The notes beneath the pieces are model-generated. The model worked only from the letters and a program-made list of their open reading frames with translations, was not told the DNA's origin and did no database searches. Positions 10,061 to 42,081 of a stretch of DNA of 64,000 bases are shown here, piece after piece. Where the stretch lies: positions 186,001 through 250,000 of the IMG/VR virus record IMGVR_UViG_3300020165_000007; one strand, given 5' to 3'. Each line of letters begins with the position of its first letter. The stretch's first letter is position 1. The position numbers and the translations under genes were made by a program.

Positions 10061-10090
10061 GTGGTAAAATGTGGTAGAAAGTGGTGTAAA
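10061..10090 (+). promoter_or_regulatory. Three 10-bp tandem GTGGT repeats (MraZ-box-like)
   Basis: GTGGTAAAAT-GTGGTAGAAA-GTGGTGTAAA. Confidence 0.5.
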
Positions 10091-10404
10091 AATCCGAAGG
10101 ATTATGTATTACTTATGAATACATTTTCGTATATGGTTTTCCTTTTATAAAACCTCTTAGTAAGTATGTCTTTAAAGTCTCTGAGGGGGAAGACTTCTTC
10201 GGTTATTATGGGGGGAATGTAACTATGAACGAAACATAACGACCCGTGTAACGGGGAGTGGTTCACGAAGTGAAATGTATAGTGAGTAGTTACATTTACT
10301 CCATAATAATATCATTCTATATAAGTTATAGAAAAGTTTTATTGGTATCATCACACTAATTCTAATAGTTATTAGTTTCTTGGTATCTTAGAATCGTCCA
10401 CGTA

Positions 10405-10433
10405 GTGGCTAGTTGTAATCCCCTACCCCTTTT
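10405..10433 (+). repeat. Dispersed motif GTGGCTRGTT-N-AATYCCCTACCCCTTTT copy 1
   Basis: Also at 11810-11839 and 13019-13050. Confidence 0.85.
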
Positions 10434-10454
10434 GTTTTTATTAGTGAGTCTAAG

Positions 10455-18804: not shown

Positions 18805-19812
18805 TTATATCTCATAAGGTGACTCACTAAAGGTTACTTCTTTCAAAGTTGGACATTCTTTAACTAAGTGTTGTATGATAAACCCTTTAAATAACCTTTT
18901 ATCATTGAAGGTTAATAAGTTTCCATTTTCTTTTAGTTTAAAGGTCTTCACTTTCTCTAGTACGTCAATCTTATTCATAATTAGTTTATTAACACCGTTA
19001 ATCTTAATTCCTTTTTTTAAATCGTCTAAATCTAACCATCCAATTTGTCTAGGTCTACCTGTGGTTGCACCAAACTCATTACCAACTTGCCTAATTAAAT
19101 CAAAGGTTCTTGATGGTTCTTCAAATTTTTTATTACCAACATAAGTTCTATAGGCTTTAGCGATTCCATGTACATCCCTTACGGTTTGATATGGTATTCC
19201 GTTTTGTAATGCGCCGGCAACTGTACAATGAGATGAGGTCACGTATGGGTAATCTCCCCAATCTATATCCAACTCAAACCCTTGAGCACCCTCAAAAAGT
19301 ATCTTAACCTCATCTTCTCCATGTAGTTCATCAAAAATATCAACCACATAATCAAATATCTCTTCACAATCCTCTGCTCGTAATCCTGTTCTGTTATACT
19401 TTTCTCTGTATGTAGGTCCGTTACCTGTTTTAGTTGTACCTATCTTTATATCTTTAGAGTCTTCTTCCACATACTCATCTTTAGTTATGTGAACTCTTCT
19501 ATCTATTAGTAGATTTTCTCTTACCTTGAATCCTCCTTTTTCTAATGTCCTTATCTCTTCTTCAAGTTTTGATGGGTTTACTATACATCCAGGTCCAATT
19601 ATAGACTTAATACCATATAAGACCCCAACAGGTATATAGTGAGTCACAAATTTAGTACCGTCATGGTAAATAGTATGTCCTGCATTTCCACCTCCATTAT
19701 ATCTTATTATGTGTGTATATTCATCTTTTGTTGAAGCCAATGCATGGGCTACTTTTCCTTTTCCTGTGTCACCGGCTTGTAAATCGACGATGATGTCTGT
19801 GTATTTAATCAT
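18805..19812 (-). CDS. purA: Adenylosuccinate synthetase (short form)
   Basis: GDTGKGK, GGGNAGHT, EGAQGFELDIDWGDYPYVTSS, EFGATTGRPRQIGWLD. Confidence 0.95.
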   Translation of the reverse strand: MIKYTDIIVDLQAGDTGKGKVAHALASTKDEYTHIIRYNGGGNAGHTIYHDGTKFVTHYIPVGVLYGIKSIIGPGCIVNPSKLEEEIRTLEKGGFKVRENLLIDRRVHITKDEYVEEDSKDIKIGTTKTGNGPTYREKYNRTGLRAEDCEEIFDYVVDIFDELHGEDEVKILFEGAQGFELDIDWGDYPYVTSSHCTVAGALQNGIPYQTVRDVHGIAKAYRTYVGNKKFEEPSRTFDLIRQVGNEFGATTGRPRQIGWLDLDDLKKGIKINGVNKLIMNKIDVLEKVKTFKLKENGNLLTFNDKRLFKGFIIQHLVKECPTLKEVTFSESPYEI

Positions 19813-20226: not shown

Positions 20227-20919
20227 ATGGAAAAAGAACTTAAACAATTAAAAGTGGTACTAAATATGTTCCAAAAGTTTATGGAACTTAATAAGTGTAG
20301 TGTTGCGAGTTTTGACGTAGATGCTTATAACTTGCAATTACAATCAGGAAATAAATTTTATTGCAATAGTCAGTGGACAAATTCACCCATACCTATTGAT
20401 AAATTTATTGAAGATTTTATGGACGTTTTAAAAGGTAATAATGAATTAGATACTTGGGTTAACCTTCCTGGAGGTGGTGACGCCGAGATATATAACTATA
20501 CTTTTGAGATTAATCCTGAGGAGCGTATGGTAAGAATATATGGGGATTATAGTTACTATACCGAGGGTGAACAAAACAATAATGTATATGATGCTGACGT
20601 ATTACCTGAAGAAATTATTGAATTTTTAAATAAATTAAGTGAGGAAGGTCACGGTGAATTGGAGGTAGATTTCCAAGGTTCAGGTGATAGTGGTTGGCTA
20701 GAGGAAGATGGTAGAACAAGGAGAGATGACCATTATAAAATACCTGAGGTCGTAGAAAACTATTGTTATGAACTTTTAAAACAATATCCAGGTTGGGAAA
20801 TTAATGAAGGTTCTCAAGGTAATTTTTATTTTGATTCCTCAAAAATGATAGTTTCTTTTGAATTCCAATATAATGAAGAGGTTAGTGAGAGAGAATTAAT
20901 GTATCAGTTCAAATATTAA
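20227..20919 (+). CDS. DUF6878-like protein
   Basis: VDFQGSGDSG and GWEINEGSQG motifs. Confidence 0.6.
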   Translation: MEKELKQLKVVLNMFQKFMELNKCSVASFDVDAYNLQLQSGNKFYCNSQWTNSPIPIDKFIEDFMDVLKGNNELDTWVNLPGGGDAEIYNYTFEINPEERMVRIYGDYSYYTEGEQNNNVYDADVLPEEIIEFLNKLSEEGHGELEVDFQGSGDSGWLEEDGRTRRDDHYKIPEVVENYCYELLKQYPGWEINEGSQGNFYFDSSKMIVSFEFQYNEEVSERELMYQFKY

Positions 20920-21953
20920 TTACTTAATGGTGCCTTAATCGTTGGGTGTGATTCGTAGTTAATGATTTTATAATCAAACTCACCATTTAAAATGTCTTGT
21001 TCAATAAGATGAATCTTAGGTAATTTAAAAGGTTTTCTTTTAATTTGTTCTTTAGCCTGTTCTATATGGTTATTATATAAATGAACATCACCTAAGTTAC
21101 CAATCAAATCACCAGGGACCATACCAACTTCATCGGCAATAATTTCTAATAACATCGCATAAGACGCGATATTGAAAGGTAATCCTAAAAAGGTATCCAC
21201 ACTCCTTTGGTTCCACATAAGTGAAATCTCACGTCTTGGAATACCGTATACGTCCATATGTTCATGGAAGTAGTCATTAGAACGACTCATAGGATTTACC
21301 CCTTCATTATAAATGTCAATTCTCTCATCTAAATTCAATTCTCTTGTGTATACTTGAAAACCATAATGACATGGAGGTAATACCATTTTATCAATATCAC
21401 CTGGATTCCATGCGTTAACCATAAGTCTTCTTGAATCAGGATTATCTTTAACCTGCTCTATCAAATTCCTTATTTGGTCAACAGAAGACTTAACGTTTGG
21501 GAATCCCTCTTTATCGGTTAGTTGGTGGTCGTACTTATCCCACTTCTTCCATTGTTTACCGTAAACAGGGCCTAACTCCCCATACAAATCCGCAAAACTA
21601 TCATCAGTTTTAATGTTTTCTATAAATTCTTCCATAGACACATAATCGACATCCGTTACTAATAAGTTCATGAGTTTATAATTCTTATAAGCATCTCCGT
21701 TCCATATCTTACAATTATTTTCAACTAAGTAACGAATATTTGTATCTCCTTTTAAAAACCATTTAAGTTCTGTCATAAGTGATTTAATCGCCATCTTCTT
21801 AGTTGTAAGAAGAGGAAACCCATCTCTCATTTTATGACGTATAGAATAACCGAAGATTGACTTAGTACCTGTACCTGTTCTATCTTTTTTTTCTACACCA
21901 TATTCCAATATGGTCATCAAAAGTTCTTGATATTGTTTATCTAATTTATTCAT
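20916..21953 (-). CDS. thyA: Thymidylate synthase
   Basis: DRTGTGT, FPLLTTKK, LGPVYGKQW, LPPCH, QRSVDTFLGLPFNIASY, GDVHLY. Confidence 0.97.
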   Translation of the reverse strand: MNKLDKQYQELLMTILEYGVEKKDRTGTGTKSIFGYSIRHKMRDGFPLLTTKKMAIKSLMTELKWFLKGDTNIRYLVENNCKIWNGDAYKNYKLMNLLVTDVDYVSMEEFIENIKTDDSFADLYGELGPVYGKQWKKWDKYDHQLTDKEGFPNVKSSVDQIRNLIEQVKDNPDSRRLMVNAWNPGDIDKMVLPPCHYGFQVYTRELNLDERIDIYNEGVNPMSRSNDYFHEHMDVYGIPRREISLMWNQRSVDTFLGLPFNIASYAMLLEIIADEVGMVPGDLIGNLGDVHLYNNHIEQAKEQIKRKPFKLPKIHLIEQDILNGEFDYKIINYESHPTIKAPLSN

Positions 21954-23587: not shown

Positions 23588-23663
23588 AAAAAAGGTGGAG
23601 AGTTTCCTCCCCACCTGTAAGGCCGACTTGGATGTCGAACTCCACCACTCGTTTCACAACGAG
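23588..23663 (-). terminator. Three-hairpin structured element ending in a terminator with a possible antiterminator
   Basis: Minus strand: CUCGUU-GUGA-AACGAG; CGAC-N6-GUCG; GGUGGGGAG-GAAA-CUCUCCACC-U6. Confidence 0.65.
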
Positions 23664-23664
23664 A

Positions 23665-23928
23665 TTAACTAACCCCCTCTTTCATTTTAGTAACTGCGTA
23701 CTGTCCGAGAGTCATGGAAGATGTGTTTCCTACAATCACACATTCCTTTAGAATATCATAAGGGATGTGAATAAGATTGTCAACCCCGTTGAACATAGAA
23801 AGTGGATTTTTCAGAGCCAAAGCTGAGTGAACCGCATTAAGATAGATTTTGTGTTGGTTTTGTTCGTTATCAAACTCTTGATTCAACAACTGTCCAAACT
23901 GTGGGTGAATAATGACTACGTTTTTCAT
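23665..23928 (-). CDS. Hypothetical protein
   Basis: ORF preceded by host-type TATATTTG (23933-23940). Confidence 0.7.
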   Translation of the reverse strand: MKNVVIIHPQFGQLLNQEFDNEQNQHKIYLNAVHSALALKNPLSMFNGVDNLIHIPYDILKECVIVGNTSSMTLGQYAVTKMKEGVS

Positions 23929-23946
23929 ATCACAAATATAAGAAAA

Positions 23947-24201
23947 TTAATTCATACAAACAAGTAATTCGTCCCTAATATCTGTTAATTCTTCGATAGT
24001 ACAGTCTTCAAACAAATATTCATATTCTTCAGGTACCTCATCCACAAACAACTCATGTATTGGGTTATGTTTGATGTAATTGTTTAGGTGATGTAGAAAA
24101 AATGTATTGTCTTTTAAGTCACATTCGATTGATTGCCACCTCATAGGTTCGTTATGAATCATATTATCAAATAGGTTGAATGAGATTTCGTTATTTTCCA
24201 T
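23947..24201 (-). CDS. Hypothetical protein
   Basis: ORF preceded by TATATTTG (24206-24213). Confidence 0.6.
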   Translation of the reverse strand: MENNEISFNLFDNMIHNEPMRWQSIECDLKDNTFFLHHLNNYIKHNPIHELFVDEVPEEYEYLFEDCTIEELTDIRDELLVCMN

Positions 24202-24257
24202 ATGTCAAATATATACATTTATTACGATGTATCCTATTTTTTTAAAAAAAAAGTTAC

Positions 24258-25190
24258 ATGAGAATTATAGTTACAGGAGGATTAGGTTTTATAGGTTCTA
24301 ATTTTGTTAATCTATTGAATGAGAGATTACCAAAAATCGAAGTAGTAATTTTAGATAAGATGACCTACGCAGCAGACCCAAATAGTATTATTAAGAATAA
24401 TAAATTAATTAAAAAAGATATTTGTGATGTCACACCTGAAGATTTAGGTGTATATGATTATATTGTTCATTTTGCCGCTGAAAGTCATGTAGATAATTCA
24501 ATATCAGATGGTAGACCTTTTATGAACACGAACATTATTGGAACATTTAACTTAGTTGAATGTGCAAAACAAAATAAATCTTTGAAAAAGTTTATTCACA
24601 TATCCACTGATGAGGTATACGGTGATATGGCAGATTCTGAATGGTTAAGTTCGAATGAGGACCACAACTTATCCCCAAGTTCTTATTACTCATCATCTAA
24701 AGCATCTTCAGACATGATTGTGTTGTCGTCTCACAGAACATTTGGTTTACCTTACCTTTTGACAAGAACTTGTAACAACTATGGTGAAAACCAAAATAAA
24801 GAGAAGTTTTTACCTAAAATTTTTGATTCTATAATTAACGAAAAAACAGTTCCTGTTTACGGTGATGGAAAACAGATTAGAGAGTGGATGTATGTTAAAG
24901 ATAATGTTGAAGTAATCTTTGACTTGATGATGGATGATAAAGTCGTAAATGAAGTATACAATATTGGTACTGACAATACTTTCTATAATTTAGAATTAGT
25001 TAAAAAGATATCTGAAATTATCGGTAAAGACGTAACATTTGAATTTGTTACTGACCGTTTAGGTCACGATAGAAAATACAATTTAGATTGTACGAAACTT
25101 AAAGAATACTACAAGTCAAAGGGTAAAGAGTACCAACCAAAAGATATTATTGATTGGATGAATCAGTTCCTCCTTGAAGAAGTGGTATAA
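24258..25190 (+). CDS. rfbB: dTDP-glucose 4,6-dehydratase
   Basis: TGGLGFIGSNF, HFAAESHVDNS, HISTDEVYG, YSSSK, CNNYG, DRLGHDRKY. Confidence 0.93.
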   Translation: MRIIVTGGLGFIGSNFVNLLNERLPKIEVVILDKMTYAADPNSIIKNNKLIKKDICDVTPEDLGVYDYIVHFAAESHVDNSISDGRPFMNTNIIGTFNLVECAKQNKSLKKFIHISTDEVYGDMADSEWLSSNEDHNLSPSSYYSSSKASSDMIVLSSHRTFGLPYLLTRTCNNYGENQNKEKFLPKIFDSIINEKTVPVYGDGKQIREWMYVKDNVEVIFDLMMDDKVVNEVYNIGTDNTFYNLELVKKISEIIGKDVTFEFVTDRLGHDRKYNLDCTKLKEYYKSKGKEYQPKDIIDWMNQFLLEEVV

Positions 25191-25527
25191 GTATATTTAA
25201 GTACTTCTTTTCTTCTGTTCTATTCAATACATAGGACATGTCAAAGTCTATACCTAGTCTTTCTTTTATACTGTTTTCTAAGTACTCCTGCATTTCAGGT
25301 GATTGTTCATAACCATAAAGAATAAGATTAGAAACTGATGGGAGTACTTTTAAATCAATAAAATCCAGTATATTTCTAACAATTATAAAGTAAGGTTTAC
25401 CATTCTTATGTAATACCGCAGTATCGTAGAGAAAACCTGGTAGGGTTCTATCTTCTAACTCTTGAAATTTGAGTCCATCGACAATATTGTCTATTTGTTT
25501 CTTTAATACATCAGGTAGAGTACTCAT
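25147..25527 (-). CDS. Hypothetical protein
   Basis: ORF coupled to upstream gene. Confidence 0.6.
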   Translation of the reverse strand: MSTLPDVLKKQIDNIVDGLKFQELEDRTLPGFLYDTAVLHKNGKPYFIIVRNILDFIDLKVLPSVSNLILYGYEQSPEMQEYLENSIKERLGIDFDMSYVLNRTEEKKYLNILIPLLQGGTDSSNQ

Positions 25528-26438
25528 TTTTTTAATTTTTTTAAGTTAATAGGTACTACATTTCCTTTATCTAAATACATTAATATATCCACTGATTTAT
25601 AACTACCATTCAAATATCTTTTAATGAAATCTTCTTTTTGACCTACACCAGTTTTTACCTGTACAGTATATAGTTTTCCTTTAAATTCTACTATTAAGTC
25701 GATACCTAATTTCATATCTATAAAATCACCATCCCCGCCTTGTCTTACAACTGTACCTCCCCACTTATCACTTTCAATCCACTTTACCGCTTTATTTTCA
25801 GTCGCTAAACCTATTCTATCCGTAACCCCTAATTTTTTATCTGCTATATCTATTAAGTTATGCCCATCAAACATATTACCAAACTCATCTTGGATATCAT
25901 TTTTATATTTTTTTAAGATGTCTTTTAATCGGGTCGGGTTATTTTCCTCAGAAATTTGTTGTAAGATATCATTTCTACCTTGTTCAAATAAAATGTCAGT
26001 AACCAACTCAGAAAGTAAGGTATAATTTGTGTTTATCTTATTTGAGTGGTGCCACCTTCCGTTAACTTCAACTCTTTTAAAATTTTCTAACTCTTCTAAG
26101 AGTTTATTGTAATACCAAGAATTTATTTTATTAGCATTTTTTAACTTAAGTAACCATTCTTTTGAGTTTTCCTTTTCCTCGTTACTCATAGGTGATTTTA
26201 TTTCATCCTGAATGTCGTTAACCAATTTTTTAAGACCTAATCCATTATCACTATGTAAAAATGCTCTTAAATTATTAATTTTTTTTCGTATCTCTGACTT
26301 ATTAAAACTCACGGGCTCGTTATTGGGTATACCGTCCATATTTGGTATACCGTCATAGTTGTCCCCCCGCGGGTGCATTGGGTCATTGGGTCCGATAAGG
26401 TCTTGTTCTCTTAATATTTTACGTATAAGTTCTTTCAT
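25524..26438 (-). CDS. Leader-bearing protein with C-terminal PD-(D/E)XK-like nuclease motif
   Basis: MKELIRKILREQ; G..TEN.A...GIDLIV...TVQVKT. Confidence 0.6.
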   Translation of the reverse strand: MKELIRKILREQDLIGPNDPMHPRGDNYDGIPNMDGIPNNEPVSFNKSEIRKKINNLRAFLHSDNGLGLKKLVNDIQDEIKSPMSNEEKENSKEWLLKLKNANKINSWYYNKLLEELENFKRVEVNGRWHHSNKINTNYTLLSELVTDILFEQGRNDILQQISEENNPTRLKDILKKYKNDIQDEFGNMFDGHNLIDIADKKLGVTDRIGLATENKAVKWIESDKWGGTVVRQGGDGDFIDMKLGIDLIVEFKGKLYTVQVKTGVGQKEDFIKRYLNGSYKSVDILMYLDKGNVVPINLKKLKK

Positions 26439-26476
26439 ACTTCAGGTAATTTCATGTTATTGTTTTTATCTATTAC

Positions 26477-27148
26477 TTATGACCCATATAATCTCCATGC
26501 ATTTCTATAGTTGTGGTCCATACCAGTCATATACAATCCGTACTTATCGATTATATCTAAAAAAGATTCTTTTGCTGCCATCCCTATTTCAGTAGTTACT
26601 TCATACAAATCATCTTGATGAATATCGTGGTCAATCATAAATAGTTCGTCAAAGTCCCATCTAGTATCATCATCTCTATCTAAAAATTGTACTGAACCGT
26701 TAGTTATGCGGACCTTCATACCTAATTCAGTACCATATGGATTTTCATCAGGGTTACCTTCCGTCCTACTGATAATCCCAATAGATAAAGGTGTCACATC
26801 CATTTCATATCCTCCTGAAGATATATGTCTTTTTTTACCTATACCTATTTCTTTTTTGGCTAATTCAAGTGCTTTATCATATCCACCATAGAATTTTATT
26901 TTCAGTTTGTCAATCTCCTCTTCGTATTCTAAACAATTTATACCAATATATCTACAGGGTGTTAGTTCTGTACCATTTTTACTCCAATAGTCAAATAAGA
27001 ATTCTTCTACTTGAGGACTTAGTTCCTTTTTTTTAGGTGCTCCTTGCCAACCTTCACTCATTTCATACTCATCACTTTTAGGTGAAGCGTCAGTAACATG
27101 TGAATACTCTAAGTCTTCTCTCAATATTTTACGTATAAGTTCTTTCAT
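26477..27148 (-). CDS. Leader-bearing hypothetical protein
   Basis: MKELIRKILRED; TATTTAT 27158-27164. Confidence 0.75.
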   Translation of the reverse strand: MKELIRKILREDLEYSHVTDASPKSDEYEMSEGWQGAPKKKELSPQVEEFLFDYWSKNGTELTPCRYIGINCLEYEEEIDKLKIKFYGGYDKALELAKKEIGIGKKRHISSGGYEMDVTPLSIGIISRTEGNPDENPYGTELGMKVRITNGSVQFLDRDDDTRWDFDELFMIDHDIHQDDLYEVTTEIGMAAKESFLDIIDKYGLYMTGMDHNYRNAWRLYGS

Positions 27149-27174
27149 AGTATGTTAATAAATATCGTTAAAGT

Positions 27175-27208
27175 AAAAAAACCTCAGTCGACTAAGACTG
27201 AGGTTTTT
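27175..27208 (-). terminator. Intrinsic terminator downstream of large ncRNA
   Basis: Minus strand AAAAACCTCAGTC-TTAGTC-GACTGAGGTTTTTTT. Confidence 0.85.
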
Positions 27209-27238
27209 AATGTTATATATATTGGGGTAGGGAATTAA

Positions 27239-28060
27239 AGGACGCTGAGATTACACGTTTGAATGACTCGTCTTTTGTGGGATTATTATTACTTTTTCCC
27301 CACTTATCCACCCCATTGACAGGGGTATCGAATCAGTGTCGGTTACTATCGGTAACCACTCGTATCGTTGATAACTACTCAACCGTTACTAAAATCTCTT
27401 AAGACTTGCGGTCTCATAAAGGGTCGGCCAACCCACGAGTTGTTTCACAATCGACATCCTTAGACTTGCGGTCTGAAGGAAAACTTCGTTGACAAAGGTC
27501 CGAAGTATTAGACACCTTTCGTCATCAACGCTCGAAGACTCTTGCTTTTCTAATTGATTTTAGATAAACAACATGGATTTATGAAAGATGCGCTTCGAGA
27601 GAAGTTCTATACCTTTGGAGTACAGAATGCTTCACACCTCTCTGTAAGTCTGTCAACTTACGGTAAGTTAGGACCACGTCGACTTGTCGTCTCGGAGACC
27701 CCTCATACTGGTACTCAGCCCTACAACACCTGACAGGGTGTGTCGAACCGTCACCTGTAGCTTTTCCTATTGATATCACTATCTCAACTCTGATATTCCA
27801 CGGACTCAGAGTGGTTTCATCCCTTTAGCAGTTGCCCTTAGGGTTTTGACCGTAGCCACTTTGTTTAGTTGTCAGAGTAAACTCTGCGGATATCTGAGAG
27901 TTGCTCAACACTCTTCAATCCCTTTAGTCCTGTTACCAGGGTTATCTAACGACGCTAAACCGCCGATGACTAATAACTCACTGTGATTTTAAAAAAAGGG
28001 GGTTAATCTTTTTTGATATAAACTCGATTCAGTGAGTGTTCGTCATTATTATTTCAAAGA
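27239..28060 (-). ncRNA. Large (~820 nt) structured non-coding RNA, GOLLD-like
   Basis: GC-elevated, no credible ORF, dense hairpins with GNRA loops on minus strand, duplicated AGACCGCAAGUCU, 3' end GUGUAAUCUCAGCG; host-type promoter upstream, terminator downstream. Family call is from recalled size and motifs. Confidence 0.75.
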
Positions 28061-28067
28061 ACTTCTA

Positions 28068-28075
28068 CAAAGATA
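28068..28075 (-). promoter_or_regulatory. Bacteroidota-type -7 promoter element (TAnnTTTG) for the ncRNA
   Basis: TATCTTTG on minus strand; second TATATTTG at 28162-28169. Confidence 0.6.
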
Positions 28076-28205
28076 AGAAACTTTTTTCTTAATCTCCAAT
28101 TTTTTTTTACTTTTTTTTAAAAGGTAATATATAAATATACTGTTTTGTCTAAAAGGTTGTACAAATATATAAAAAATCTTTCATATATCAATCAAAAACA
28201 CCATA

Positions 28206-28418
28206 TTATTTAGAATACTGTTTATAATTACTATTTAATGTATCTAAATTACCCTCAGCAGTAGCAAGTTTTTCTATTAATTTATCCATTTCTTCAATAA
28301 TACCTGGATGTTCTCCAATACCCGTGGGATTGTTAAAGTAAATTTCTAATGTAGCTAAACACTCTAACTTGTCAGCCTCATACTTAGACTTTAATGCTTT
28401 GTAAATATAGTTTTTCAT
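28206..28418 (-). CDS. Conserved T4-like phage hypothetical protein
   Basis: YFNNPTGIGEHP..IEEMDKL motif. Confidence 0.7.
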   Translation of the reverse strand: MKNYIYKALKSKYEADKLECLATLEIYFNNPTGIGEHPGIIEEMDKLIEKLATAEGNLDTLNSNYKQYSK

Positions 28419-28822
28419 TTTAAAATTATGTTTAATAGTTTATTAAGTTGTTTCGTCATTGGTTCCGGTAATTCGTCTTTACCGAAGTATCCACATTCAC
28501 TGTGTTCATCACCATCTATAGCGTTATCCAAGTCAGGATATATAGGTTCTTCTGTATCTAAAAGATGACAATACATCACTCCCTTTAAAATTTCTCCGTC
28601 TCTTGTGTACCTTTTTATTGCACCAATAAATTCGACATTACCGTAGATAGGTAAATCTGTTTCTTCAATAAATTCCCTAACCGCAGCTTCTCTCGGTGTC
28701 TCTCCTTGCTCCATTTTCCCGCCAGGACAAGACCAAAAACCTGGTAATGTTCCTTCATTGTTTCTTTTACATAGTAAAACTTTATTTTCATGTCTCACTA
28801 TTATTCCAGCATATTTCTTCAT
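28415..28822 (-). CDS. NUDIX hydrolase
   Basis: PGGKMEQGETPREAAVREFIEETDL Nudix box. Confidence 0.92.
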   Translation of the reverse strand: MKKYAGIIVRHENKVLLCKRNNEGTLPGFWSCPGGKMEQGETPREAAVREFIEETDLPIYGNVEFIGAIKRYTRDGEILKGVMYCHLLDTEEPIYPDLDNAIDGDEHSECGYFGKDELPEPMTKQLNKLLNIILK

Positions 28823-28839
28823 GTATAATATTTATGTAT

Positions 28840-29196
28840 ATGAAGGTAATGATAAATAATAACATTTTTAAAGTCAAATTATGTACGAGACAAAAATCGA
28901 TAGAGGAGGGAATGCAAAATAAAAACTTTAACGAATCTTTTAATGGAATGTTATTTATGATGCCAAAAACTACCGAACAAAGTTTTTGGACGTATAACTG
29001 TATTATTCCTTTAGATATATTAATGATTAATAGAGGCGAAATAAATGAGGTACATCATAACTGCAAACCTTGTCACAAACAATCACAATGTGATTCATAT
29101 AAAGGTTACGGTGGTGAAGTATTAGAATTACCTGGAGGTACTTGTAAAAGTTTAGACATTAAAAAAGGAGACTCAGTCTCCTTTTCTTTAGTTTGA
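28840..29196 (+). CDS. DUF192 family protein
   Basis: GMLF...SFWTYNCIIPLDILMI...VLELPGG...IKKGD; start reassigned to 28840. Confidence 0.85.
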   Translation: MKVMINNNIFKVKLCTRQKSIEEGMQNKNFNESFNGMLFMMPKTTEQSFWTYNCIIPLDILMINRGEINEVHHNCKPCHKQSQCDSYKGYGGEVLELPGGTCKSLDIKKGDSVSFSLV

Positions 29197-30603
29197 TTTA
29201 CTTTCGTTAATCTTTTCTTTTAGAACTTCAACGAATCTTCGTTGAATCATCTTTACAAACTTAACGTATGGAGTGTCTCCCTCTTTTTTACCATACTTCT
29301 TCTTACCTGAAGGAGGTCTCTTACTTCTACCAAAATAATTTAGTGCTGAAATATTTGTAATACATTTATGTCCTCCTGAATTTGCTTGAATCATCTCCCA
29401 AGCAGGAACACCTAACTTATCAAGTATTGCCCATTCACCATCCGTTAAATCATTATATGGTTTGTTCATTATTGTCTTTAATCTATCCATATACTCTTCA
29501 CCACCGTCTATAGACCTAACTTTATCTCCATAAAACGCTTCTAAATCGGCGTTAGTAAACCCTACAGACTCTTGGTCAAAACTTTTACCTGATTCTGATA
29601 TCCACTTAATAGTTGATAATGGTATTATTTTATCTCTGAGTTGTGGTTCCCATTTCGCTAAGACTTCTTGAGCAATCTCACCTAAGTTTACACCTTTAAG
29701 TTCTCTCTCACCCTTAAATGGATTACAACTTGCCTGAACTAATCCCATGGGCCAAGCGATAACTAAAAAATCTGCGTCAGGATTGTTTTTAAATGGTGTA
29801 TATCTATCATATGAACCCGGTTTAAACATAGAACCTCCACCATATTGAACGATTATTCCGTCATCTACTTTTACTTTATCACTACTATCTTGTTTTTTCA
29901 CATAACCTTGTTGATTTAAAACCATTTCCTCAGGTGATGCATATCCTTCTTCTTGTGCAATTCTATTAATATTTTGAAATATATTTAATAGTGATGGTGA
30001 TGAAGACATAACTAATTTTTCTAAGAACTTAGGTTTGTTTTTATAAGCCAGTAGTAGTTTATTCGTGGCCAACCCTAAAGCCATTTTATTTTTTTGTAAT
30101 GATTTATCCTTTTGTAATTTAAATATAAAGTTCATTATATCTTGAGGTTCAAGACCAAATCTAGCGAAATCTGCCGAATCAACTGTTGATATTAGTGTAA
30201 TATCATCTGATGGGAATATGTCTGATGGTGACATAATATCAGAAAGTGTTGCCACATTTGAACGAGATGACCTAAAGGATGTTGAAGTATCTCCCTCAAC
30301 ACCCGTCTGACTATCGTGGTGGTCTGTATGAACCACAAACATAGGTTTACCATGTGCAAAATCTACAAGAACTGGCATTGTGTCTCCTTGAGCGTCCTGT
30401 TTTTTGACTGCAAACTCTTTATCTCCGTATTGAATTATCTCAGAGTCTACTACTTCTATTCCGTTATTTTCCAAATAGTTTTTCATCGCTAAGGCGGTAG
30501 TTACACCGTCTAAGTCTTGGTGGAAATATATCTTAGCCTTCTTGTACCTATCTGCAAGTGCCTTAATATTTCTTAATCCTGTCTCGTTTAATATTTTTTT
30601 CAT
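29188..30603 (-). CDS. DHH/DHHA1-like phosphoesterase
   Basis: YFHQDLDGVTTA, VDFAH, TDHHD, C-terminal GGH. Confidence 0.7.
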   Translation of the reverse strand: MKKILNETGLRNIKALADRYKKAKIYFHQDLDGVTTALAMKNYLENNGIEVVDSEIIQYGDKEFAVKKQDAQGDTMPVLVDFAHGKPMFVVHTDHHDSQTGVEGDTSTSFRSSRSNVATLSDIMSPSDIFPSDDITLISTVDSADFARFGLEPQDIMNFIFKLQKDKSLQKNKMALGLATNKLLLAYKNKPKFLEKLVMSSSPSLLNIFQNINRIAQEEGYASPEEMVLNQQGYVKKQDSSDKVKVDDGIIVQYGGGSMFKPGSYDRYTPFKNNPDADFLVIAWPMGLVQASCNPFKGERELKGVNLGEIAQEVLAKWEPQLRDKIIPLSTIKWISESGKSFDQESVGFTNADLEAFYGDKVRSIDGGEEYMDRLKTIMNKPYNDLTDGEWAILDKLGVPAWEMIQANSGGHKCITNISALNYFGRSKRPPSGKKKYGKKEGDTPYVKFVKMIQRRFVEVLKEKINESKSN

Positions 30604-31001: not shown

Positions 31002-32060
31002 TTACTCTTGAGTCATAATATACTTCTTACCATTATAGATATATAAACTACCAAATGGAAGGTCTAATAAATTATCGATTCTCTGACCCATAACATTATA
31101 ATAGTTATTATCTAGTGGTCGTTGAGTATTTTGAATCTCACCTACACTGTTAGTAGTGTTGTCTAACAAGACCGCATCAATTGCATGTACTACACCATTT
31201 TGAGCTTCTAAATCAGCTAAGACGACTGTAGCAGTGCCGTTAATTGTTACTGTTTCACCGACACCGACTGTCAAAGTACCACCACCAACTGTGGTCGCTT
31301 CCAGTCCATCATATAAATCAGTACTCATAACAGTAGTACCTAATACGTGATACAAAAGAATGTCAGTCAAATTAGGAAGAACTAAAAGGTCAGTAACCTC
31401 AACACCCAACGTAGTTGCCAATGCGACGAACGCATCGTCAGTCGGTGCGAATACTGTAAAGGTACCTTCACCTTCTAAAGTACTTTGTAGACCTCCGGCA
31501 ATAACAGCTGCTTCGAGGTAGTTATGGACATCACTTCCTTCAATCCAGTCCCATACTGTTGCCACTGCAGGTGTACCCGGTGGAAAAACAACCGCATCGA
31601 TAACGTGGACTACACCATTGTCAGTAATAAGGTCTGCCACAGTTACTGAAGCTACACCATTTATTGTAATAGTCATACCATCTGATTGTATGTACATTGG
31701 TTCTTCAGGGAGTAAAGTGCCTAACATAGAATTAATTGACGGTGGAAGAAGCACCTCTCCTAAATATACTTCCGGAAGTACGTGGTATAAAAGAATATCA
31801 GTAAGATTAGGTAGTGCAAGTAAATCTTCTACCTCAACATTCAATTCATATGCTAACGCAATAAATGCATCATCAGTTGGTGCAAATACGGTAAAAGTGC
31901 CCGATGTGTCACTTAATGCATCGACAAGACCAGCAGATACAACAGCGGCTTCCAACAATGTATGGTCTTCACTATTAACGATTACATCTACTACTGTAGA
32001 TTGAGAAAAACTAATTAGGGATGTTAAGGCCAACCCAAAGGCCATTAGTACTTTTTTCAT
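31002..32060 (-). CDS. Secreted double-fasciclin (FAS1) protein with T9SS-like C-terminal domain
   Basis: 2x FTVFAPTDDAF...ILLYHV...NGVVHxIDAV; signal peptide; tail YYNVMGQRI...GSLYIYNGKKYI. Confidence 0.9.
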   Translation of the reverse strand: MKKVLMAFGLALTSLISFSQSTVVDVIVNSEDHTLLEAAVVSAGLVDALSDTSGTFTVFAPTDDAFIALAYELNVEVEDLLALPNLTDILLYHVLPEVYLGEVLLPPSINSMLGTLLPEEPMYIQSDGMTITINGVASVTVADLITDNGVVHVIDAVVFPPGTPAVATVWDWIEGSDVHNYLEAAVIAGGLQSTLEGEGTFTVFAPTDDAFVALATTLGVEVTDLLVLPNLTDILLYHVLGTTVMSTDLYDGLEATTVGGGTLTVGVGETVTINGTATVVLADLEAQNGVVHAIDAVLLDNTTNSVGEIQNTQRPLDNNYYNVMGQRIDNLLDLPFGSLYIYNGKKYIMTQE

Positions 32061-32174
32061 TTTTTTTGAAATTTGTTTTTTATTGTTCCTTTAGTATAGT
32101 GTGTAGAGTTTTATTAGTCAATTGTTTTTTTGTGAAAGTTTTATTAAAAATATTTAAACAAAAAAGACTCCTCA

Positions 32175-33647
32175 TTATAAGGAGTCTTTTAACATAGTAA
32201 AAAATTTATCTTGTCTATTATTATCAGGTTTTTCAAAAACTTTTTCCATATTGTACTTACCTATTCTTTTTGGAATTTTTAATTCATTGTATTCTATGTA
32301 ATCATCTTCATAATCTCTTTCAATAACCCCATTAATAACTCCACGGGTTTGTGATAATGAGAATCTTTTATAATTTTTATCAAAACCTGTATTCACTAAC
32401 CACACTTTTACTTTGTGGTTATTCTCAACCCTATTTCTAAACATATTGGTGTAATCAGATATTTTCCTTGGTAGGAATGGGTCCCCAAAACAAGGTGAGA
32501 ACGTTGTGGTAGGTTCAGTAACTCCAACTTCAGTACCCGCAACTTTTGAAGTATACCCTAACTTAAAGTACTCAACTGCTTGTTCTGTATTTAATAATGA
32601 TATAGGTGGTAATACACCAAAAGCGTCAAAAGATAGAAAAAATATATTCTCAACCCCTAAACCTCTACCTGGCATACTTACCTTAACCTCACGTCTTATT
32701 TGGTCCAATGGATAAGAAACCCTAATGTTCTCTGTTATACTACTATCACTAAAATCAACATCACCTTCCTCATCAACTATAACATTCTCTAATAATGAGG
32801 TATTTGTTTTAGTGAATTTACTATGTATTGCGTCCCATATTACAGGTTCTTTATACTCATCTAAATCTATGAGTTTAGCGTAACATCCTCCTTCAAAGTT
32901 ATATATATAATCATCATACCATCCGTGTTCATCATCACCAATAAAATACTTTAAAGGGTCAGAAGATAGGGTAGTCTTACCAGTACCTGATAGTCCAAAA
33001 AATAAATTAACACCTCTACCGTCTTTAGTATTAGAATTAGCAGAACAATGCATCGGTAAGACTCCTCTATCAACTAAAAGAGTATTCATAACGGTAAAGA
33101 CACTTTTCTTTATCTCACCCGTATAACTCGTACCAGCTATTAAGATTTTTCTATCATCAAAATCTAATATTACAAAATTTTCATTTTTAACATCTTCAGG
33201 TCTATTTTTACTTACAAAATCAGGGCAATGTAATATTTCCCATTCAGTAAATGTAGTTGAGAATGTTGTGACAAAACTTTGTGGGTCAATTAACATATTA
33301 TTAAAGAATATGATAGCCCATGGTTCTGTACTTTCTATATTAAAAGTTGCACTGTGTTCATAATTGTAACCTGCAACTTGTCTAGCTCTGAAAGTTTTTG
33401 CGTTTTCTATATATTCTTTAATTTCATTTTTTAATGAAATATAACTATCTCTACTAACTCGTTGGTTTATGATTCTTTCAAAATCGATAGTCTTATCTGT
33501 ATATTTCCCCTCAGAAAAGTATCTATCTTTAGGTGACCTACCCGTAAATTTACCAGTATTAAAATGTAATAAACCCTCTTTGGTGGTCTTCATTCCTCTC
33601 TCCTTAGCAAGGGTCATTAATTGCTCAGTAGTTTCGTAATAAACCAT
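32175..33647 (-). CDS. pckA: Phosphoenolpyruvate carboxykinase (ATP)
   Basis: TGRSPKDR, YTGEIKK, MHCSAN, FFGLSGTGKTTLS, IGDDEHGW, NFEGGCYAK, WLVNTG. Confidence 0.96.
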   Translation of the reverse strand: MVYYETTEQLMTLAKERGMKTTKEGLLHFNTGKFTGRSPKDRYFSEGKYTDKTIDFERIINQRVSRDSYISLKNEIKEYIENAKTFRARQVAGYNYEHSATFNIESTEPWAIIFFNNMLIDPQSFVTTFSTTFTEWEILHCPDFVSKNRPEDVKNENFVILDFDDRKILIAGTSYTGEIKKSVFTVMNTLLVDRGVLPMHCSANSNTKDGRGVNLFFGLSGTGKTTLSSDPLKYFIGDDEHGWYDDYIYNFEGGCYAKLIDLDEYKEPVIWDAIHSKFTKTNTSLLENVIVDEEGDVDFSDSSITENIRVSYPLDQIRREVKVSMPGRGLGVENIFFLSFDAFGVLPPISLLNTEQAVEYFKLGYTSKVAGTEVGVTEPTTTFSPCFGDPFLPRKISDYTNMFRNRVENNHKVKVWLVNTGFDKNYKRFSLSQTRGVINGVIERDYEDDYIEYNELKIPKRIGKYNMEKVFEKPDNNRQDKFFTMLKDSL

Positions 33648-39833: not shown

Positions 39834-40180
39834 ATTGTTTTATATTTTTTAAGTTGATTTAAGTAGAAGATTATACTATCAGAAGAATCTTCATTACATA
39901 AGTAATAAAATTTATATGTATTTTCATATTCATTTTTAGTAAAGTATAATAATGTTTTAGTATCTAAAAACTGTATTAATCCTTTATTGTAAATAGTGAC
40001 TTGACCATCAAAATATTTTTTTGACCATATAATTTTATTTTTTTTTAAAGTTATTCTTAACGCGTCAATAGTATAAAAATCAGTCTCAATAATAGAAGGT
40101 AAACTTCCAATTATATTCTCAGATAAGATTGATACTTTATTTGGTATACCATAATTGTTATGTTTTTCTTTATCTTTCAT
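39830..40180 (-). CDS. Hypothetical protein
   Basis: ORF coupled on both sides. Confidence 0.6.
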   Translation of the reverse strand: MKDKEKHNNYGIPNKVSILSENIIGSLPSIIETDFYTIDALRITLKKNKIIWSKKYFDGQVTIYNKGLIQFLDTKTLLYFTKNEYENTYKFYYLCNEDSSDSIIFYLNQLKKYKTI

Positions 40181-41250
40181 TAAACTTCAAGTAATTCTTT
40201 TTCTATACTTTTTGAGTTTTTTACATAATCAATACTATCACTAATTACTTTAGTTATTTTATATGGGTCAGCGTTAGACGCAGGTCTTCTATCTTCTAGA
40301 TACCCCTTCCACGTTTTACTCGTTTGTAGTGGAACTCGTATAGACGCCCCTCTATCAGAAACACCCCAACTAAATTTAGTAATATTCTGGGTTTCATGTA
40401 ACCCTGTTAGTCTCATCTCATTACTTGAACCATAATTATTAATGTGTATATCATGTCTATCCTTGAAAGATTTAAATATATTTTGATAGTACTCTTCATC
40501 TCCGTCTTCCCTCATTTTTTTATTAGAGAAGTTACAGTGAAGTCCTGAACCGTTCCAATCACCTGTAACAGGTTTAGGATGAAATTCGATATCATAACCG
40601 TAATCCTCAGACATCTGATGTAAAATATATCTAGTAATCCATAGGTCATCTCCAGCCTTAATTTTACCCTTACTGAATACTTGGTATTCCCACTGACCTA
40701 GCATGACCTCAGCGTTCGTTCCAGTGATGTCTATACCGGCCATTATACAGTTTTCCATATGTTTATCAACAAACTCCCTACCTGTTACTTGTCCGTTACC
40801 TACACCGCAATAGTACTTTCCTTGTGGTTCAGGAAATCCATTTTTAGGAAAACCTATAGGTTTGCCGTCTTTCATTAGAGTATATTCTTGTTCAAATCCA
40901 AACCATAAATCCTCATCATCTTCATTAAATAATCCCCTACTATTACTTTCGTGTAATGTACCATCAGGGTTTAAAACTTCACATAGAACTAAATAACTTT
41001 CTAATAATCCATTATTCAGTGGATTTGGATAAAGTGTTACAGGTTTTAGTATACAATCGGAAAAATGTCCCTCAGCTTGTTCAGTGGACGACCCATCGAA
41101 TGACCATTCAGGGCAATCAGTTAACCCTACACCATGAACCGTTTTACCATGAATAGTGTGTGTAGGTGGGTTGATTACTTTTACTTTACTTCTGAGATTA
41201 GGTTCAGGATTATACCCATCTAACCATATGTATTCTAATTTAATTTTCAT
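40180..41250 (-). CDS. glnII: Glutamine synthetase type II
   Basis: EYIWLDG, WSFDGSST.QA, WFGFEQEY, NAEVM.GQWEYQ, GDWNGSGLHCNFS, RLTGLHET, DRGASIRVP, YLEDRRPASN. Confidence 0.95.
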   Translation of the reverse strand: MKIKLEYIWLDGYNPEPNLRSKVKVINPPTHTIHGKTVHGVGLTDCPEWSFDGSSTEQAEGHFSDCILKPVTLYPNPLNNGLLESYLVLCEVLNPDGTLHESNSRGLFNEDDEDLWFGFEQEYTLMKDGKPIGFPKNGFPEPQGKYYCGVGNGQVTGREFVDKHMENCIMAGIDITGTNAEVMLGQWEYQVFSKGKIKAGDDLWITRYILHQMSEDYGYDIEFHPKPVTGDWNGSGLHCNFSNKKMREDGDEEYYQNIFKSFKDRHDIHINNYGSSNEMRLTGLHETQNITKFSWGVSDRGASIRVPLQTSKTWKGYLEDRRPASNADPYKITKVISDSIDYVKNSKSIEKELLEV

Positions 41251-41279
41251 TTTTTATTTAATTAAAGTTTTATGTAAAT

Positions 41280-41936
41280 TTATTTAACCGGAATTGGAGT
41301 ACCAACGGGATATGGTGACCCTTCTTTCGCAGCAGTGACAGAAGTCATACCTGAATCTACAGGAATAGCAAATCTTAATGGAATTGCCGCCTCATTTAAA
41401 GGACCATAACATTTGGATAATATTATACCATTGTCAAGTGTGTCTATTATGTCACATGGCATTGCGAACATATTACTCATACTGGTACTTGGTGAATTTG
41501 TGTCAACAATAAACTTACGATTAGTTGGTGGTAACCATTCCCATCCGTTAGTTTCAGGATTAAATTGTGGTACTGTATCACTTGATGTAAAGAACCAAAA
41601 GAATGACCATGTTGTTCCGTCTGTCCCATCAGGAGTTTGTTGATTTTCTTTTACATTAAACTCTCCCCAAGTTTCACTTTTACCTTCCATAGCCAAGTTG
41701 GAAATTGATAGTCCGTTCATAACAGGACAAATTGCACAACCTTCGTCGAACTCAGTTCCTTGTACAGTTATTTTTTTACCTGTAGGTACAGCACCTGACG
41801 CCCCACAGAATGAGAAAGAACCTTCATGTAGTACAACCACTTCTTCAGGTTCAGGAGCGCATGTATCCACTTCCGTTTGTTGTCCACAACTTAGTAGTAA
41901 GAAGGATGACAACAATGTTAATAATGTTTTTTTCAT
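41280..41936 (-). CDS. Putative lipoprotein (Cys-containing)
   Basis: Lipobox LLSC; several Cys in mature part. Confidence 0.7.
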   Translation of the reverse strand: MKKTLLTLLSSFLLLSCGQQTEVDTCAPEPEEVVVLHEGSFSFCGASGAVPTGKKITVQGTEFDEGCAICPVMNGLSISNLAMEGKSETWGEFNVKENQQTPDGTDGTTWSFFWFFTSSDTVPQFNPETNGWEWLPPTNRKFIVDTNSPSTSMSNMFAMPCDIIDTLDNGIILSKCYGPLNEAAIPLRFAIPVDSGMTSVTAAKEGSPYPVGTPIPVK

Positions 41937-42019
41937 TGTTTATGTTTTTTAATGAGTTTATTTGATATTAATAATATCAAATTATAAGTATTAGTATACC
42001 TAATATTTTAAATTTTTTT

Positions 42020-42055
42020 AAAAAAAAAAGGGGTTCAAAAACTGAACCCCTCTTT
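42020..42055 (-). terminator. Terminator after TonB-dependent receptor gene
   Basis: A10-GGGGTTCA-AAAAC-TGAACCCC. Confidence 0.75.
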
Positions 42056-42081
42056 CATATATTTTATAATATTATCGTAAA

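What the first reader, a model, noticed from the sequence alone, without database searches (positions are those of the whole stretch)
27239..28060. ~820-nt highly structured stand-alone ncRNA (GOLLD-like) in a Bacteroidota jumbo phage
Seen: a GC-elevated ORF-free block with promoter TATCTTTG (28068-28075) and terminator (27175-27208). It has a long 5' helix (27968-27988 with 28026-28044) and hairpins CCUG-GUAA-CAGG (27929-27940), CAGAG-UUUA-CUCUG (27873-27886), GAUA-GUGA-UAUC (27772-27783) and GGUUAC-N5-GUAACC (27341-27357). AGACCGCAAGUCU is exactly duplicated (27402, 27462), there is a T-loop-like GGUUCGAC, and the 3' end is GUGUAAUCUCAGCG. Known: GOLLD RNAs are ~800 nt, phage-associated, often near tRNAs, form multimeric cages, and have no known function. 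Here no tRNA is adjacent; it sits between a NUDIX gene and leader-bearing cargo genes. If it fails to match GOLLD/ROOL it is a new large RNA class.
Basis: partly seen in the sequence, partly recalled or inferred. Interest (0 to 1): 0.85.

Follow-up and report, generated by a model that had tools for sequence, protein, structure and literature searches.

The report
GOLLD RNA gene in a jumbo phage
The ORF-free, GC-rich block is a genuine member of the already described GOLLD family of giant phage RNAs (which self-assemble into RNA-only cages of unknown function), so it is not a new RNA class, although this copy carries a conserved 5' extension that published GOLLD constructs do not include.

Summary
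Window 28062-27242 (minus strand) is an ORF-free, GC-elevated, about 820-nt structured RNA gene.

It is GOLLD. The 3' half (27642-27242) matches Rfam RF02032 end to end at 299.8 bits (gathering score 150, E 8.6e-85). No other Rfam family matches, even at E<=1.

The 5' half is not in the Rfam model. Forty-two IMG/VR viral contigs share it, and 36 of its 86 predicted pairs carry compensatory changes. It is colinear with the 5' domain of the cryo-EM GOLLD env-38 but about 90 nt shorter.

A Bacteroidota-type promoter (TTG, about 21 nt, TATCTTTG) precedes the gene. A covarying intrinsic terminator follows it.

By homology the RNA most likely forms an RNA-only dihedral nanocage. Its P21a loop is self-complementary (GGCC, changing to AGCU in a relative), as a symmetric kissing loop requires. 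The biological role of GOLLD remains unknown.

Two things go beyond the literature I could read. First, an invariant GUUCUUUGAAA leader plus a long covarying hairpin ("P0") lies 5' of where the env-38 construct starts, and it is conserved across diverged GOLLD subtypes. Second, the gene sits in a conserved block: DHH/DHHA1 phosphoesterase, NUDIX, GOLLD.

There is no tRNA in the 64 kb. Verdict: new member of a known kind, moderate-to-low interest.

The parts
28097..28099 (-). Putative -33 element (TTG), 21 nt upstream of the -7 box
   Evidence: Read from the sequence. Of 30 related lineages with a TAnnTTTG box, 28 have TTG 16-26 nt upstream of it. That this is the Bacteroidota promoter architecture is from general knowledge.
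28068..28075 (-). Putative -7 promoter box TATCTTTG (TAnnTTTG type)
   Evidence: A TAnnTTTG box with varying 'nn' lies within 50 nt upstream of the conserved leader in 30 of 38 distinct upstream contexts, against 3% expected.
28052..28062 (-). Invariant leader GUUCUUUGAAA, the probable 5' end of the transcript in this lineage
   Evidence: Identical in 18 of 19 aligned representatives. Exact GTTCTTTGAA is found upstream of the GOLLD 3' domain in 61 of 78 loci, including subtypes whose 5' domain is otherwise unrecognisable. Only one exact copy occurs in the 64-kb window.
27966..28046 (-). 'P0': a long 5' hairpin with an inner A/U stem and the C-rich loop AUUAACCCC. It lies upstream of the first helix of the published env-38 construct
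   Evidence: MFE fold. The same closing helix forms in all 19 representatives with different sequences and in distant subtypes. The start of the env-38 construct was read from the supplement.
27643..27965 (-). GOLLD 5' domain core, with multi-helix junctions and GNRA hairpins at 27940-27929 and 27783-27772
   Evidence: 86 consensus pairs, 97.9% canonical, 36 with compensatory changes against 2-11 in slid controls and 0 of 500 shuffles. nhmmer scores 320-360 bits in 42 loci. Colinear with env-38-like 5' domains.
27242..27642 (-). GOLLD conserved 3' domain (Rfam RF02032, model positions 1-416)
   Evidence: 299.8 bits, gathering score 150, E 8.6e-85. 102 pairs, 98.7% canonical, 40 with compensatory changes.
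27527..27582 (-). Variable single-stranded linker of the 3' domain. The homologous linker is disordered and points into the cage in env-38. It holds no tRNA here
   Evidence: Unpaired, gapped region of the Rfam alignment, variable in A1. No tRNA found. The role of the linker is taken from PMC12286853.
27462..27474 (-). Hairpin AGAC-CGCAA-GUCU (GOLLD-model hairpin at positions 193-206; P20 by my reading)
27421..27434 (-). Hairpin GGGU-UGGCCG-ACCC (P21a by my reading). The loop holds the self-complementary GGCC at 27429-27426
   Evidence: The loop core is GGCC in 13 of 19 representatives, AGCU in L019 and GGCU in L004. The central GC is invariant.
27402..27414 (-). Hairpin AGAC-CGCAA-GUCU (P21b by my reading), the second copy of the 13-mer
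   Evidence: The stem covaries (AGAC/GUCU changing to AACU/GGUU).
27209..27241 (-). Poorly conserved A/U-rich spacer between the GOLLD 3' end and the terminator
   Evidence: Conservation drops to 0.36.
27170..27208 (-). Intrinsic terminator: 13-bp hairpin plus U-tract
   Evidence: Conserved in all 19 representatives, with 3 of 10 pairs compensatory.
28206..28418 (-). 70-aa ORF (PHROG 1811, function unknown) immediately upstream
   Evidence: Syntenic in most subfamily loci.
28415..28822 (-). NUDIX hydrolase gene
   Evidence: Pfam PF00293, E 1.3e-19. Upstream of GOLLD in 32 loci.
29188..30603 (-). 471-aa DHH/DHHA1-type phosphoesterase, the most widely conserved neighbour of GOLLD in these phages
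   Evidence: Weak Pfam DHH and RecJ hits. The DxD, DHH and GGH motifs are visible in the translation. Upstream of GOLLD in 42 of 92 loci, including 11 of distant subtype.
26477..27148 (-). 223-aa ORF of unknown function immediately downstream. It belongs to a roughly 3.3-kb stretch that most relatives lack
   Evidence: No Pfam, PHROG or NCBIfam hit. Synteny comparison.

Best explanation
Window 28062-27242 (minus strand) encodes a full-length GOLLD RNA of about 820 nt.

Transcription. The gene has its own Bacteroidota-type promoter (TTG at -33, TATCTTTG at -7) and ends at an intrinsic terminator at 27208-27170.

Architecture. The RNA has the two-domain GOLLD layout. The conserved 3' domain is 27642-27242. 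The 5' domain core is 27965-27643. It is homologous to, but about 90 nt shorter than, that of the structurally solved env-38 GOLLD.

Inferred mechanism. By homology with env-38 (14-mer) and Streptococcus agalactiae GOLLD (12-mer), it most likely self-assembles without protein into a closed dihedral RNA nanocage. In that model the 3' domains form the equatorial rings, joined through symmetric kissing loops such as the GGCC loop at 27429-27426. The 5' domains form the caps, and the variable linker (about 27582-27527) faces the interior. It would be made during the phage's lytic programme.

Shown here: family membership, boundaries, structure supported by covariation, the conserved promoter and terminator, and the self-complementary loop.

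Inferred only: oligomerisation, its stoichiometry, and any role such as encapsulating or sequestering a macromolecule.
For: - Rfam RF02032 matches over the whole model at 299.8 bits (gathering score 150), E 8.6e-85. It is the only Rfam hit at E<=1.
- Forty-two IMG/VR viral loci share the entire RNA at 72-100% identity.
- RNAalifold on 19 representatives gives 203 pairs, 79 with compensatory changes.
- 5' domain: 86 pairs, 97.9% canonical, 36 compensatory, against 2-11 in slid controls and 0 of 500 shuffles. 3' domain: 102 pairs, 40 compensatory.
- The 5' domain starts with the same order of elements as the env-38 construct (hairpin, A-rich joiner, GNRA hairpin, AUAAAGUG-like joiner, hairpin). 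It aligns to env-38-like subtypes at several anchors.
- The P21a loop core is GGCC in 13 of 19 representatives and AGCU in L019, which preserves self-complementarity. The central GC is invariant. This fits the symmetric L21a-L21a kissing loop reported for env-38 (PMC12286853; PMC12990946).
- Promoter: TAnnTTTG occurs in 30 of 38 upstream contexts against 3% expected.
- The terminator is conserved and covaries.
- Viral context: a 270-kb IMG/VR contig, plus an endolysin, methyltransferases and a sigma factor.
Against: - There is no expression or biophysical data for this RNA.
- The MFE z-score is not significant (-1.3).
- The 5' domain is about 90 nt shorter than in env-38-like GOLLDs. The P21a loop (NGGCCN) also departs from the CGCAAG loop of other subtypes and of the Rfam consensus. 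Cage stoichiometry therefore cannot be transferred. Published GOLLDs already differ (10, 12 or 14 subunits) according to such elements.
- No tRNA is nearby, unlike many GOLLD loci.
- My assignment of the P20, P21a and P21b names rests on the Rfam structure line and on text descriptions, not on the published figure.
- The biological function of GOLLD is unknown in every system.
Confidence: 0.85

Rival explanations
1. The invariant GTTCTTTGAAA (28062-28052) is not part of the functional RNA. It is a DNA-level element, either a GOLLD-specific promoter or operator or the true -7-like box. On that reading the RNA starts at or just before P0 (about 28047).
For: The motif is invariant and so shows no covariation. 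No conserved intramolecular partner was found. TTCTTTG resembles the TTTG end of the -7 box. TTC-N3-GAA is a small inverted repeat that a dimeric DNA-binding protein could use. The window encodes its own sigma factor.
Against: A canonical TAnnTTTG box with an upstream TTG lies 5-31 nt upstream of the motif in 30 of 38 lineages. Where the distance is 24-31 nt, a small hairpin sits between them. In the lineages shown where it is 28-29 nt, that hairpin covaries (CAGGA/UCCUG, UCGGA/UCCGA, CAGUA/UACUG). This argues that the stretch is transcribed. The motif occurs only once in 64 kb, so it is not a general phage promoter.
Confidence: 0.25
2. The 5' block (28062-27643) is a separate RNA or a cis-regulatory leader that merely abuts a 3'-domain-only GOLLD.
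For: The Rfam model covers only 27642-27242. The isolated 3' domain of S. agalactiae GOLLD can assemble on its own.
Against: No promoter-like or terminator-like site separates the halves. The two halves are contiguous and co-conserved in 42 loci. The 5' block is colinear with the 5' domain of env-38.
Confidence: 0.03
3. It is a new large RNA class unrelated to GOLLD or ROOL, or an intron, tmRNA or RNase P.
For: None remained after testing. The 5' half has no Rfam hit of its own.
Against: The full-model GOLLD match is at 299.8 bits. No other family matches at E<=1. ARAGORN finds no tmRNA.
Confidence: 0.01
4. The block is protein-coding or a degraded gene.
For: Short ORFs of up to 66 aa exist on both strands.
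Against: Substitutions among relatives are compensatory in helices rather than codon-periodic. Base-paired cells are 98% canonical.
Confidence: 0.01

Closest known systems
GOLLD RNA (Rfam RF02032), in particular the marine metagenomic env-38 GOLLD solved by cryo-EM as a D7 14-mer (PMC12286853; PDB 9MEE as listed in PMC12990946)
   Same: The 3' domain matches in full. The RNA has two domains and is about 820 nt long. The 5' domain opens with the same order of elements. Both P21a and P21b hairpins are present. It has a variable internal linker and a phage context.
   Different: The 5' core is about 90 nt shorter (323 against about 420 nt). The P21a loop is NGGCCN rather than CGCAAG. No tRNA is nearby. 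A 97-nt 5' extension (GUUCUUUGAAA leader plus the P0 hairpin) lies outside the boundaries of the env-38 construct.
Streptococcus agalactiae GOLLD (12-mer full length; 3' domain alone mainly a 10-mer; PMC12990946)
   Same: Same family. Like this RNA, it has a reduced 5' domain relative to env-38.
   Different: The S. agalactiae RNA lacks P21b, which this RNA has. It comes from a Firmicutes chromosome or prophage rather than a freshwater jumbo phage. Sequence similarity is only detectable at covariance-model level.
Other IMG/VR GOLLD subtypes found here (for example L066, L067, L109, L144; 315-335 bits to RF02032)
   Same: Same leader motif and a P0 hairpin. The same upstream DHH/DHHA1 gene and downstream 87-aa and 98-aa genes are present in 11 of them. 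Several sit on contigs over 200 kb.
   Different: Their 5' domains are env-38-like and about 80-100 nt longer. nhmmer with this subfamily's 5' profile barely detects them (17-27 bits or nothing). tRNAs lie within a few kb in some.
ROOL RNA
   Same: A large, ornate, phage-associated RNA that also forms an RNA-only cage.
   Different: No sequence or structure match. It is a different fold, with intertwined 5' and 3' regions.

Membership tests
GOLLD (RF02032) | Match to the curated covariance model above its gathering score | tested here: met
   299.8 bits against a gathering score of 150, model 1-416 of 416, E 8.6e-85.
GOLLD (RF02032) | The conserved 3'-domain helices are maintained by covariation | tested here: met
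   102 pairs, 98.7% canonical, 40 with compensatory changes. Slid controls give 3-8.
GOLLD (RF02032) | A large, separately folding and less conserved 5' domain, giving a total of about 700-830 nt | tested here: met
   The 5' core at 27965-27643 has 86 pairs, 36 compensatory. The total is 821 nt. It is colinear with env-38 and env-38-like 5' domains but about 90 nt shorter.
GOLLD (RF02032) | Phage or prophage location | tested here: met
   Identical to a 270-kb IMG/VR viral contig. Phage genes are present in the window.
GOLLD (RF02032) | Proximity to tRNA genes or arrays (frequent in the family, not obligatory) | tested here: not met
   No tRNA in the 64 kb and none in the linker. Some relatives have tRNAs within a few kb.
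GOLLD (RF02032) | Self-complementary loop for the symmetric inter-shell kissing contact (L21a) | tested here: met
   The loop core is GGCC, changing to AGCU or GGCU in relatives, and the central GC is invariant. The helix naming is inferred from the Rfam structure line.
GOLLD (RF02032) | RNA-only homo-oligomeric nanocage (10-14 subunits) | not testable with these tools
   Needs mass photometry or cryo-EM. Known for env-38 and S. agalactiae GOLLD.
GOLLD (RF02032) | Expression that rises during phage lysis | not testable with these tools
   No transcriptome is available. Only a conserved promoter and terminator were shown.
ROOL, group I/II introns, tmRNA, RNase P | Match to the family's covariance model | tested here: not met
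   No hit at the gathering score in 64 kb, none at E<=1 in 27100-28250, and no tmRNA by ARAGORN.

The most novel reading that the evidence does not exclude
The roughly 97-nt 5' extension is part of the mature RNA in freshwater-phage GOLLDs and acts as a functional handle that is missing from every construct solved so far. It consists of the invariant GUUCUUUGAAA followed by the covarying P0 hairpin with a C-rich loop. It could be a docking site for a protein, the ribosome or cargo, or an assembly or processing signal. Combined with the shortened cap domain and the 4-nt palindromic P21a loop, this subfamily may build a cage of different stoichiometry from the known 10-, 12- and 14-mers.
Probability: 0.3. 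Interest if true: 0.55.

Novelty: new member of a known kind. Interest (0 to 1): 0.3.

Why it matters
GOLLD has been known since 2009 and was shown in 2025 to form one of the largest natural RNA-only assemblies, yet its function is still unknown. This locus does not change that.

It does place a well-defined GOLLD subfamily in viral contigs of up to 270-297 kb. It also gives that subfamily a conserved host-type (apparently Bacteroidota) promoter, its own terminator and a conserved gene neighbourhood (DHH/DHHA1 phosphoesterase, NUDIX hydrolase).

It further points to a strictly conserved 5' leader and an extra hairpin that the structural studies I could read did not include. These are concrete leads for anyone choosing constructs or hosts to study GOLLD function. 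As a discovery of a new RNA class it is negative.

Tried and rejected
- blastn of the region against 50,697 GenBank phage records found nothing.
- My one genome-contig scan used a GC-rich 16-mer from the 5' domain and returned only chance matches. nhmmer found no GOLLD in any of the 120 loci. Host assignment through prophages or MAGs therefore failed, and that scan is spent.
- MFE z-scores for either strand are not significant. I relied on covariation instead.
- A search for a conserved intramolecular partner of the leader motif gave only weak candidates that are already inside helices.
- TAnnTTTG is not enriched upstream of the window's ORFs. It is therefore not evidence about the phage's general promoters.
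- A tblastn search with the phage sigma factor gave about 35% identity to phages of many phyla, which says nothing about the host.
- Homologues of the DHH gene occur in two uncultured phages of 634-642 kb, but no GOLLD lies within 8 kb of them.
- The original 2009 GOLLD paper is not held. The cryo-EM paper's stored supplement holds only the 3'-end alignment. I could not check whether the leader and P0 were already drawn in the published consensus.
- I considered the GGUUCGAC 'T-loop' and rejected it, because it lies inside a stem.

Full report
**What is there.** The minus strand of window 28075-27170 holds an ORF-free block; the longest internal ORF is 66 aa. Its GC content is 0.42-0.465, against about 0.30 in the surrounding genes and about 0.20 in the AT-rich stretch just upstream. 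A 13-bp hairpin followed by a T-run lies at 27208-27177.

**Identity.** A gathering-threshold Rfam scan of the whole window returns one hit. It is GOLLD (RF02032) at 27642-27242 on the minus strand, at 299.8 bits against a gathering score of 150, E 8.6e-85, covering model positions 1-416 of 416. A permissive scan (E<=1) of 27100-28250 adds nothing, so there is no ROOL, intron, RNase P or tmRNA. ARAGORN finds no tRNA or tmRNA in the 64 kb. The Rfam model represents only the conserved 3' domain of GOLLD. [quoted passage not shown]

**Relatives.** Two motif scans of IMG/VR gave 151 loci.
- One locus, L014, is 100% identical to the 971-nt query (window 27150-28120), as are all eleven neighbouring genes compared. 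It comes from contig IMGVR_UViG_3300020165_000007 of 270,383 bp, so the window very probably comes from that contig.
- nhmmer profiles built from my alignment find the GOLLD 3' domain in 100 loci.
- Forty-two of those form a tight subfamily with the window: 72-100% identity over roughly 730-970 nt, with 5'-domain scores of 320-360 bits.
- The others score 90 bits or less with the 3' profile, and their 5' domains are almost undetectable.
- Those distant subtypes are nevertheless good GOLLDs, at 315-335 bits to RF02032.

**Structure of the part Rfam does not cover.** I aligned 19 non-redundant representatives (alignment A1).
- RNAalifold predicts 203 pairs, 79 with compensatory double changes.
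- My own count for the 5' domain (27965-27643) gives 86 pairs, 97.9% canonical cells and 36 pairs with compensatory changes. Partners slid by 1-3 columns give 2-11, and 0 of 500 column shuffles reach the observed value.
- The 3' domain gives 102 pairs with 40 compensatory.
- GGUUCGAC (27749-27742) lies in a stem, not a T-loop.
- The single-sequence MFE is not significantly lower than that of shuffles (z = -1.3). The evidence for structure is therefore comparative.

**Homology of the 5' domain.** The env-38 construct sequence is printed in the cryo-EM paper's supplement. It opens with a 5-bp hairpin, an A-rich joiner, a GNRA hairpin, an AUAAAGUG-like joiner and a further hairpin. The window shows the same order from 27965: CGGCG-GUUUAG-CGUCG, then UUAGAUAA, then CCUG-GUAA-CAGG, then ACUAAAGGGA. 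The distant IMG/VR subtypes are very close to env-38 in this region. A joint alignment shows further shared anchors (AGGGCAAC, and UUGAG-hairpin-CAAUAGGAA). It also shows that the window's subfamily lacks roughly 90 nt present in the env-38-like 5' domains. This is a diverged, shortened version of the canonical 5' domain, not a different one.

**Boundaries and the 5' extension.** Upstream of the first env-38-equivalent hairpin lie two further elements.
- A long hairpin, which I call P0, spans 28046-27966. It forms in every lineage with different sequences, including the distant subtypes.
- An 11-nt leader, GUUCUUUGAAA, spans 28062-28052. It is invariant in 18 of 19 representatives. Exact GTTCTTTGAA lies 413-519 nt upstream of the 3' domain in 61 of 78 loci with enough upstream sequence.

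The leader occurs only once in the window, so it is not a general phage promoter.

A TAnnTTTG box lies upstream of it in 30 of 38 distinct contexts, against 3% expected. Twenty-eight of those also have TTG 16-26 nt further upstream. From general knowledge, this is the -33/-7 architecture of Bacteroidota promoters. The box sits 5-7 nt upstream in some lineages, including the window, and 24-31 nt upstream in others. In the lineages shown where the gap is 28-29 nt, a small covarying hairpin fills it. This indicates that the leader is transcribed.

In the window the transcript would start at about 28062. I found no conserved pairing partner for the leader and no mention of the motif in the papers or stored supplements I could search. 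The 2009 description is not held, so I cannot say that the extension is unreported.

**Signs of the oligomerisation mechanism.** Published structures show env-38 GOLLD as a D7 14-mer, with two half-shells joined by symmetric kissing loops L21a-L21a and L21b-L21b. S. agalactiae GOLLD, which lacks P21b and parts of the 5' domain, forms a 12-mer.

In the Rfam structure line, the window has both hairpins inside the P21 stem. The first has the loop UGGCCG. Across the subfamily its 4-nt core is GGCC in 13 representatives, AGCU in one and GGCU in one. The first two are self-complementary; GGCU is so only with G-U wobble. The other four representatives keep only the invariant central GC. This is what a symmetric kissing contact predicts.

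The loop differs from the CGCAAG loop of other subtypes. The two copies of AGACCGCAAGUCU are two distinct CGCAAG-loop hairpins whose stems diverge independently in relatives. The helix names are my reading of text and structure lines.

**Context.** All neighbours lie on the same strand. Upstream to downstream they are:
- a DHH/DHHA1-type phosphoesterase (30603-29188), with motifs visible and weak Pfam and NCBIfam hits;
- NUDIX (28822-28415);
- a 70-aa PHROG-1811 protein (28418-28206);
- GOLLD;
- then genes of unknown function.

The DHH gene lies upstream of GOLLD in 42 of 92 loci, including 11 with distant GOLLD subtypes. An 87-aa and a 98-aa gene plus thyA follow downstream. This may reflect shared ancestry of one phage lineage rather than a functional link. 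Homologues of the DHH gene in two uncultured phages of 634-642 kb have no GOLLD nearby. Several GOLLD-bearing contigs exceed 200 kb.

Evidence for a Bacteroidota host is indirect, as set out above. My genome-collection scan was wasted on chance hits.

**Verdict.** The finding is a correct identification of a GOLLD RNA, so it is a new member of a known kind. The remaining interest lies in the conserved leader and P0 extension, the shortened cap domain and the conserved neighbourhood. These are leads, not results.

Noticed in passing
window 28052-28062 (minus); also L066, L067, L126, L144 and others: The exact 11-mer GTTCTTTGAAA is conserved at the 5' end of GOLLD genes across subtypes whose 5' domains have otherwise diverged beyond nhmmer detection. 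No partner or function was found.
   Followed up: partly
window 28000-28016 (minus); L081 and L144 P0 loops: The P0 hairpin carries a conserved inner stem-loop, AAAAAG-AUUAACCCC-CUUUUU. In L081 and L144 the loop reads UUAACACCUCCCU. From memory this resembles the anti-Shine-Dalgarno end of 16S rRNA. It is a weak lead, given reports that ribosomes bind GOLLD.
   Followed up: no
L148:11278-12193 compared with window 27161-28081: L148 is 100% identical to the window from the upstream genes through the GOLLD 5' domain to window position 27706. It then switches to the L121-type sequence for the rest of the RNA. This is either recombination inside the ultra-conserved 5' core or an assembly chimera.
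   Followed up: partly
window 29188-30603 (minus): A 471-aa protein with DHH/DHHA1 phosphoesterase motifs (NrnA/RecJ-like) has no PHROG match. It is 78-100% identical in subfamily loci and 42-57% identical in phages with distant GOLLD subtypes, and it always lies upstream of GOLLD.
   Followed up: partly
window 18805-19812 (minus): A short (335 aa) adenylosuccinate-synthetase-like protein hits PHROG 1211 and, below cut-off, the NCBIfam PurZ model (122.7 bits against a cut-off of 300). It could be PurA-like or PurZ-like (2-aminoadenine genomes). It lies next to thymidylate synthase (20916-21953).
   Followed up: no
window 31002-33647, 40180-44835, 52027-53001, 62617-63549: There is a dense set of cellular-type genes on a viral contig. 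They are PEP carboxykinase, a fasciclin-domain protein, a glutamine-synthetase-like protein, a 917-aa TonB-dependent receptor with a CarboxypepD_reg/SusC-like N-terminus, DnaJ and PRPP synthetase.
   Followed up: no
window 60459-61274 (minus): A phage-encoded RpoD-like sigma factor (PHROG 351) is present. The phage may therefore redirect host RNA polymerase, yet the GOLLD promoter looks like a host-type -33/-7 promoter.
   Followed up: partly
window 23657-27148: About 3.3 kb separates GOLLD from the conserved 87-aa gene (about 23665-23928). This stretch holds ORFs of 223, 304, 126 and 171 aa and an opposite-strand NAD-dependent sugar epimerase. It is absent or shorter in most relatives, where the 87-aa gene lies 0.1-0.7 kb downstream of GOLLD. 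It looks like a variable insertion site.
   Followed up: partly
L144:4078-4485 and 10036-10443: This locus holds two identical GOLLD copies in inverted orientation with mirrored flanks. It may be an inverted-repeat assembly artefact or a genuine duplication.
   Followed up: no
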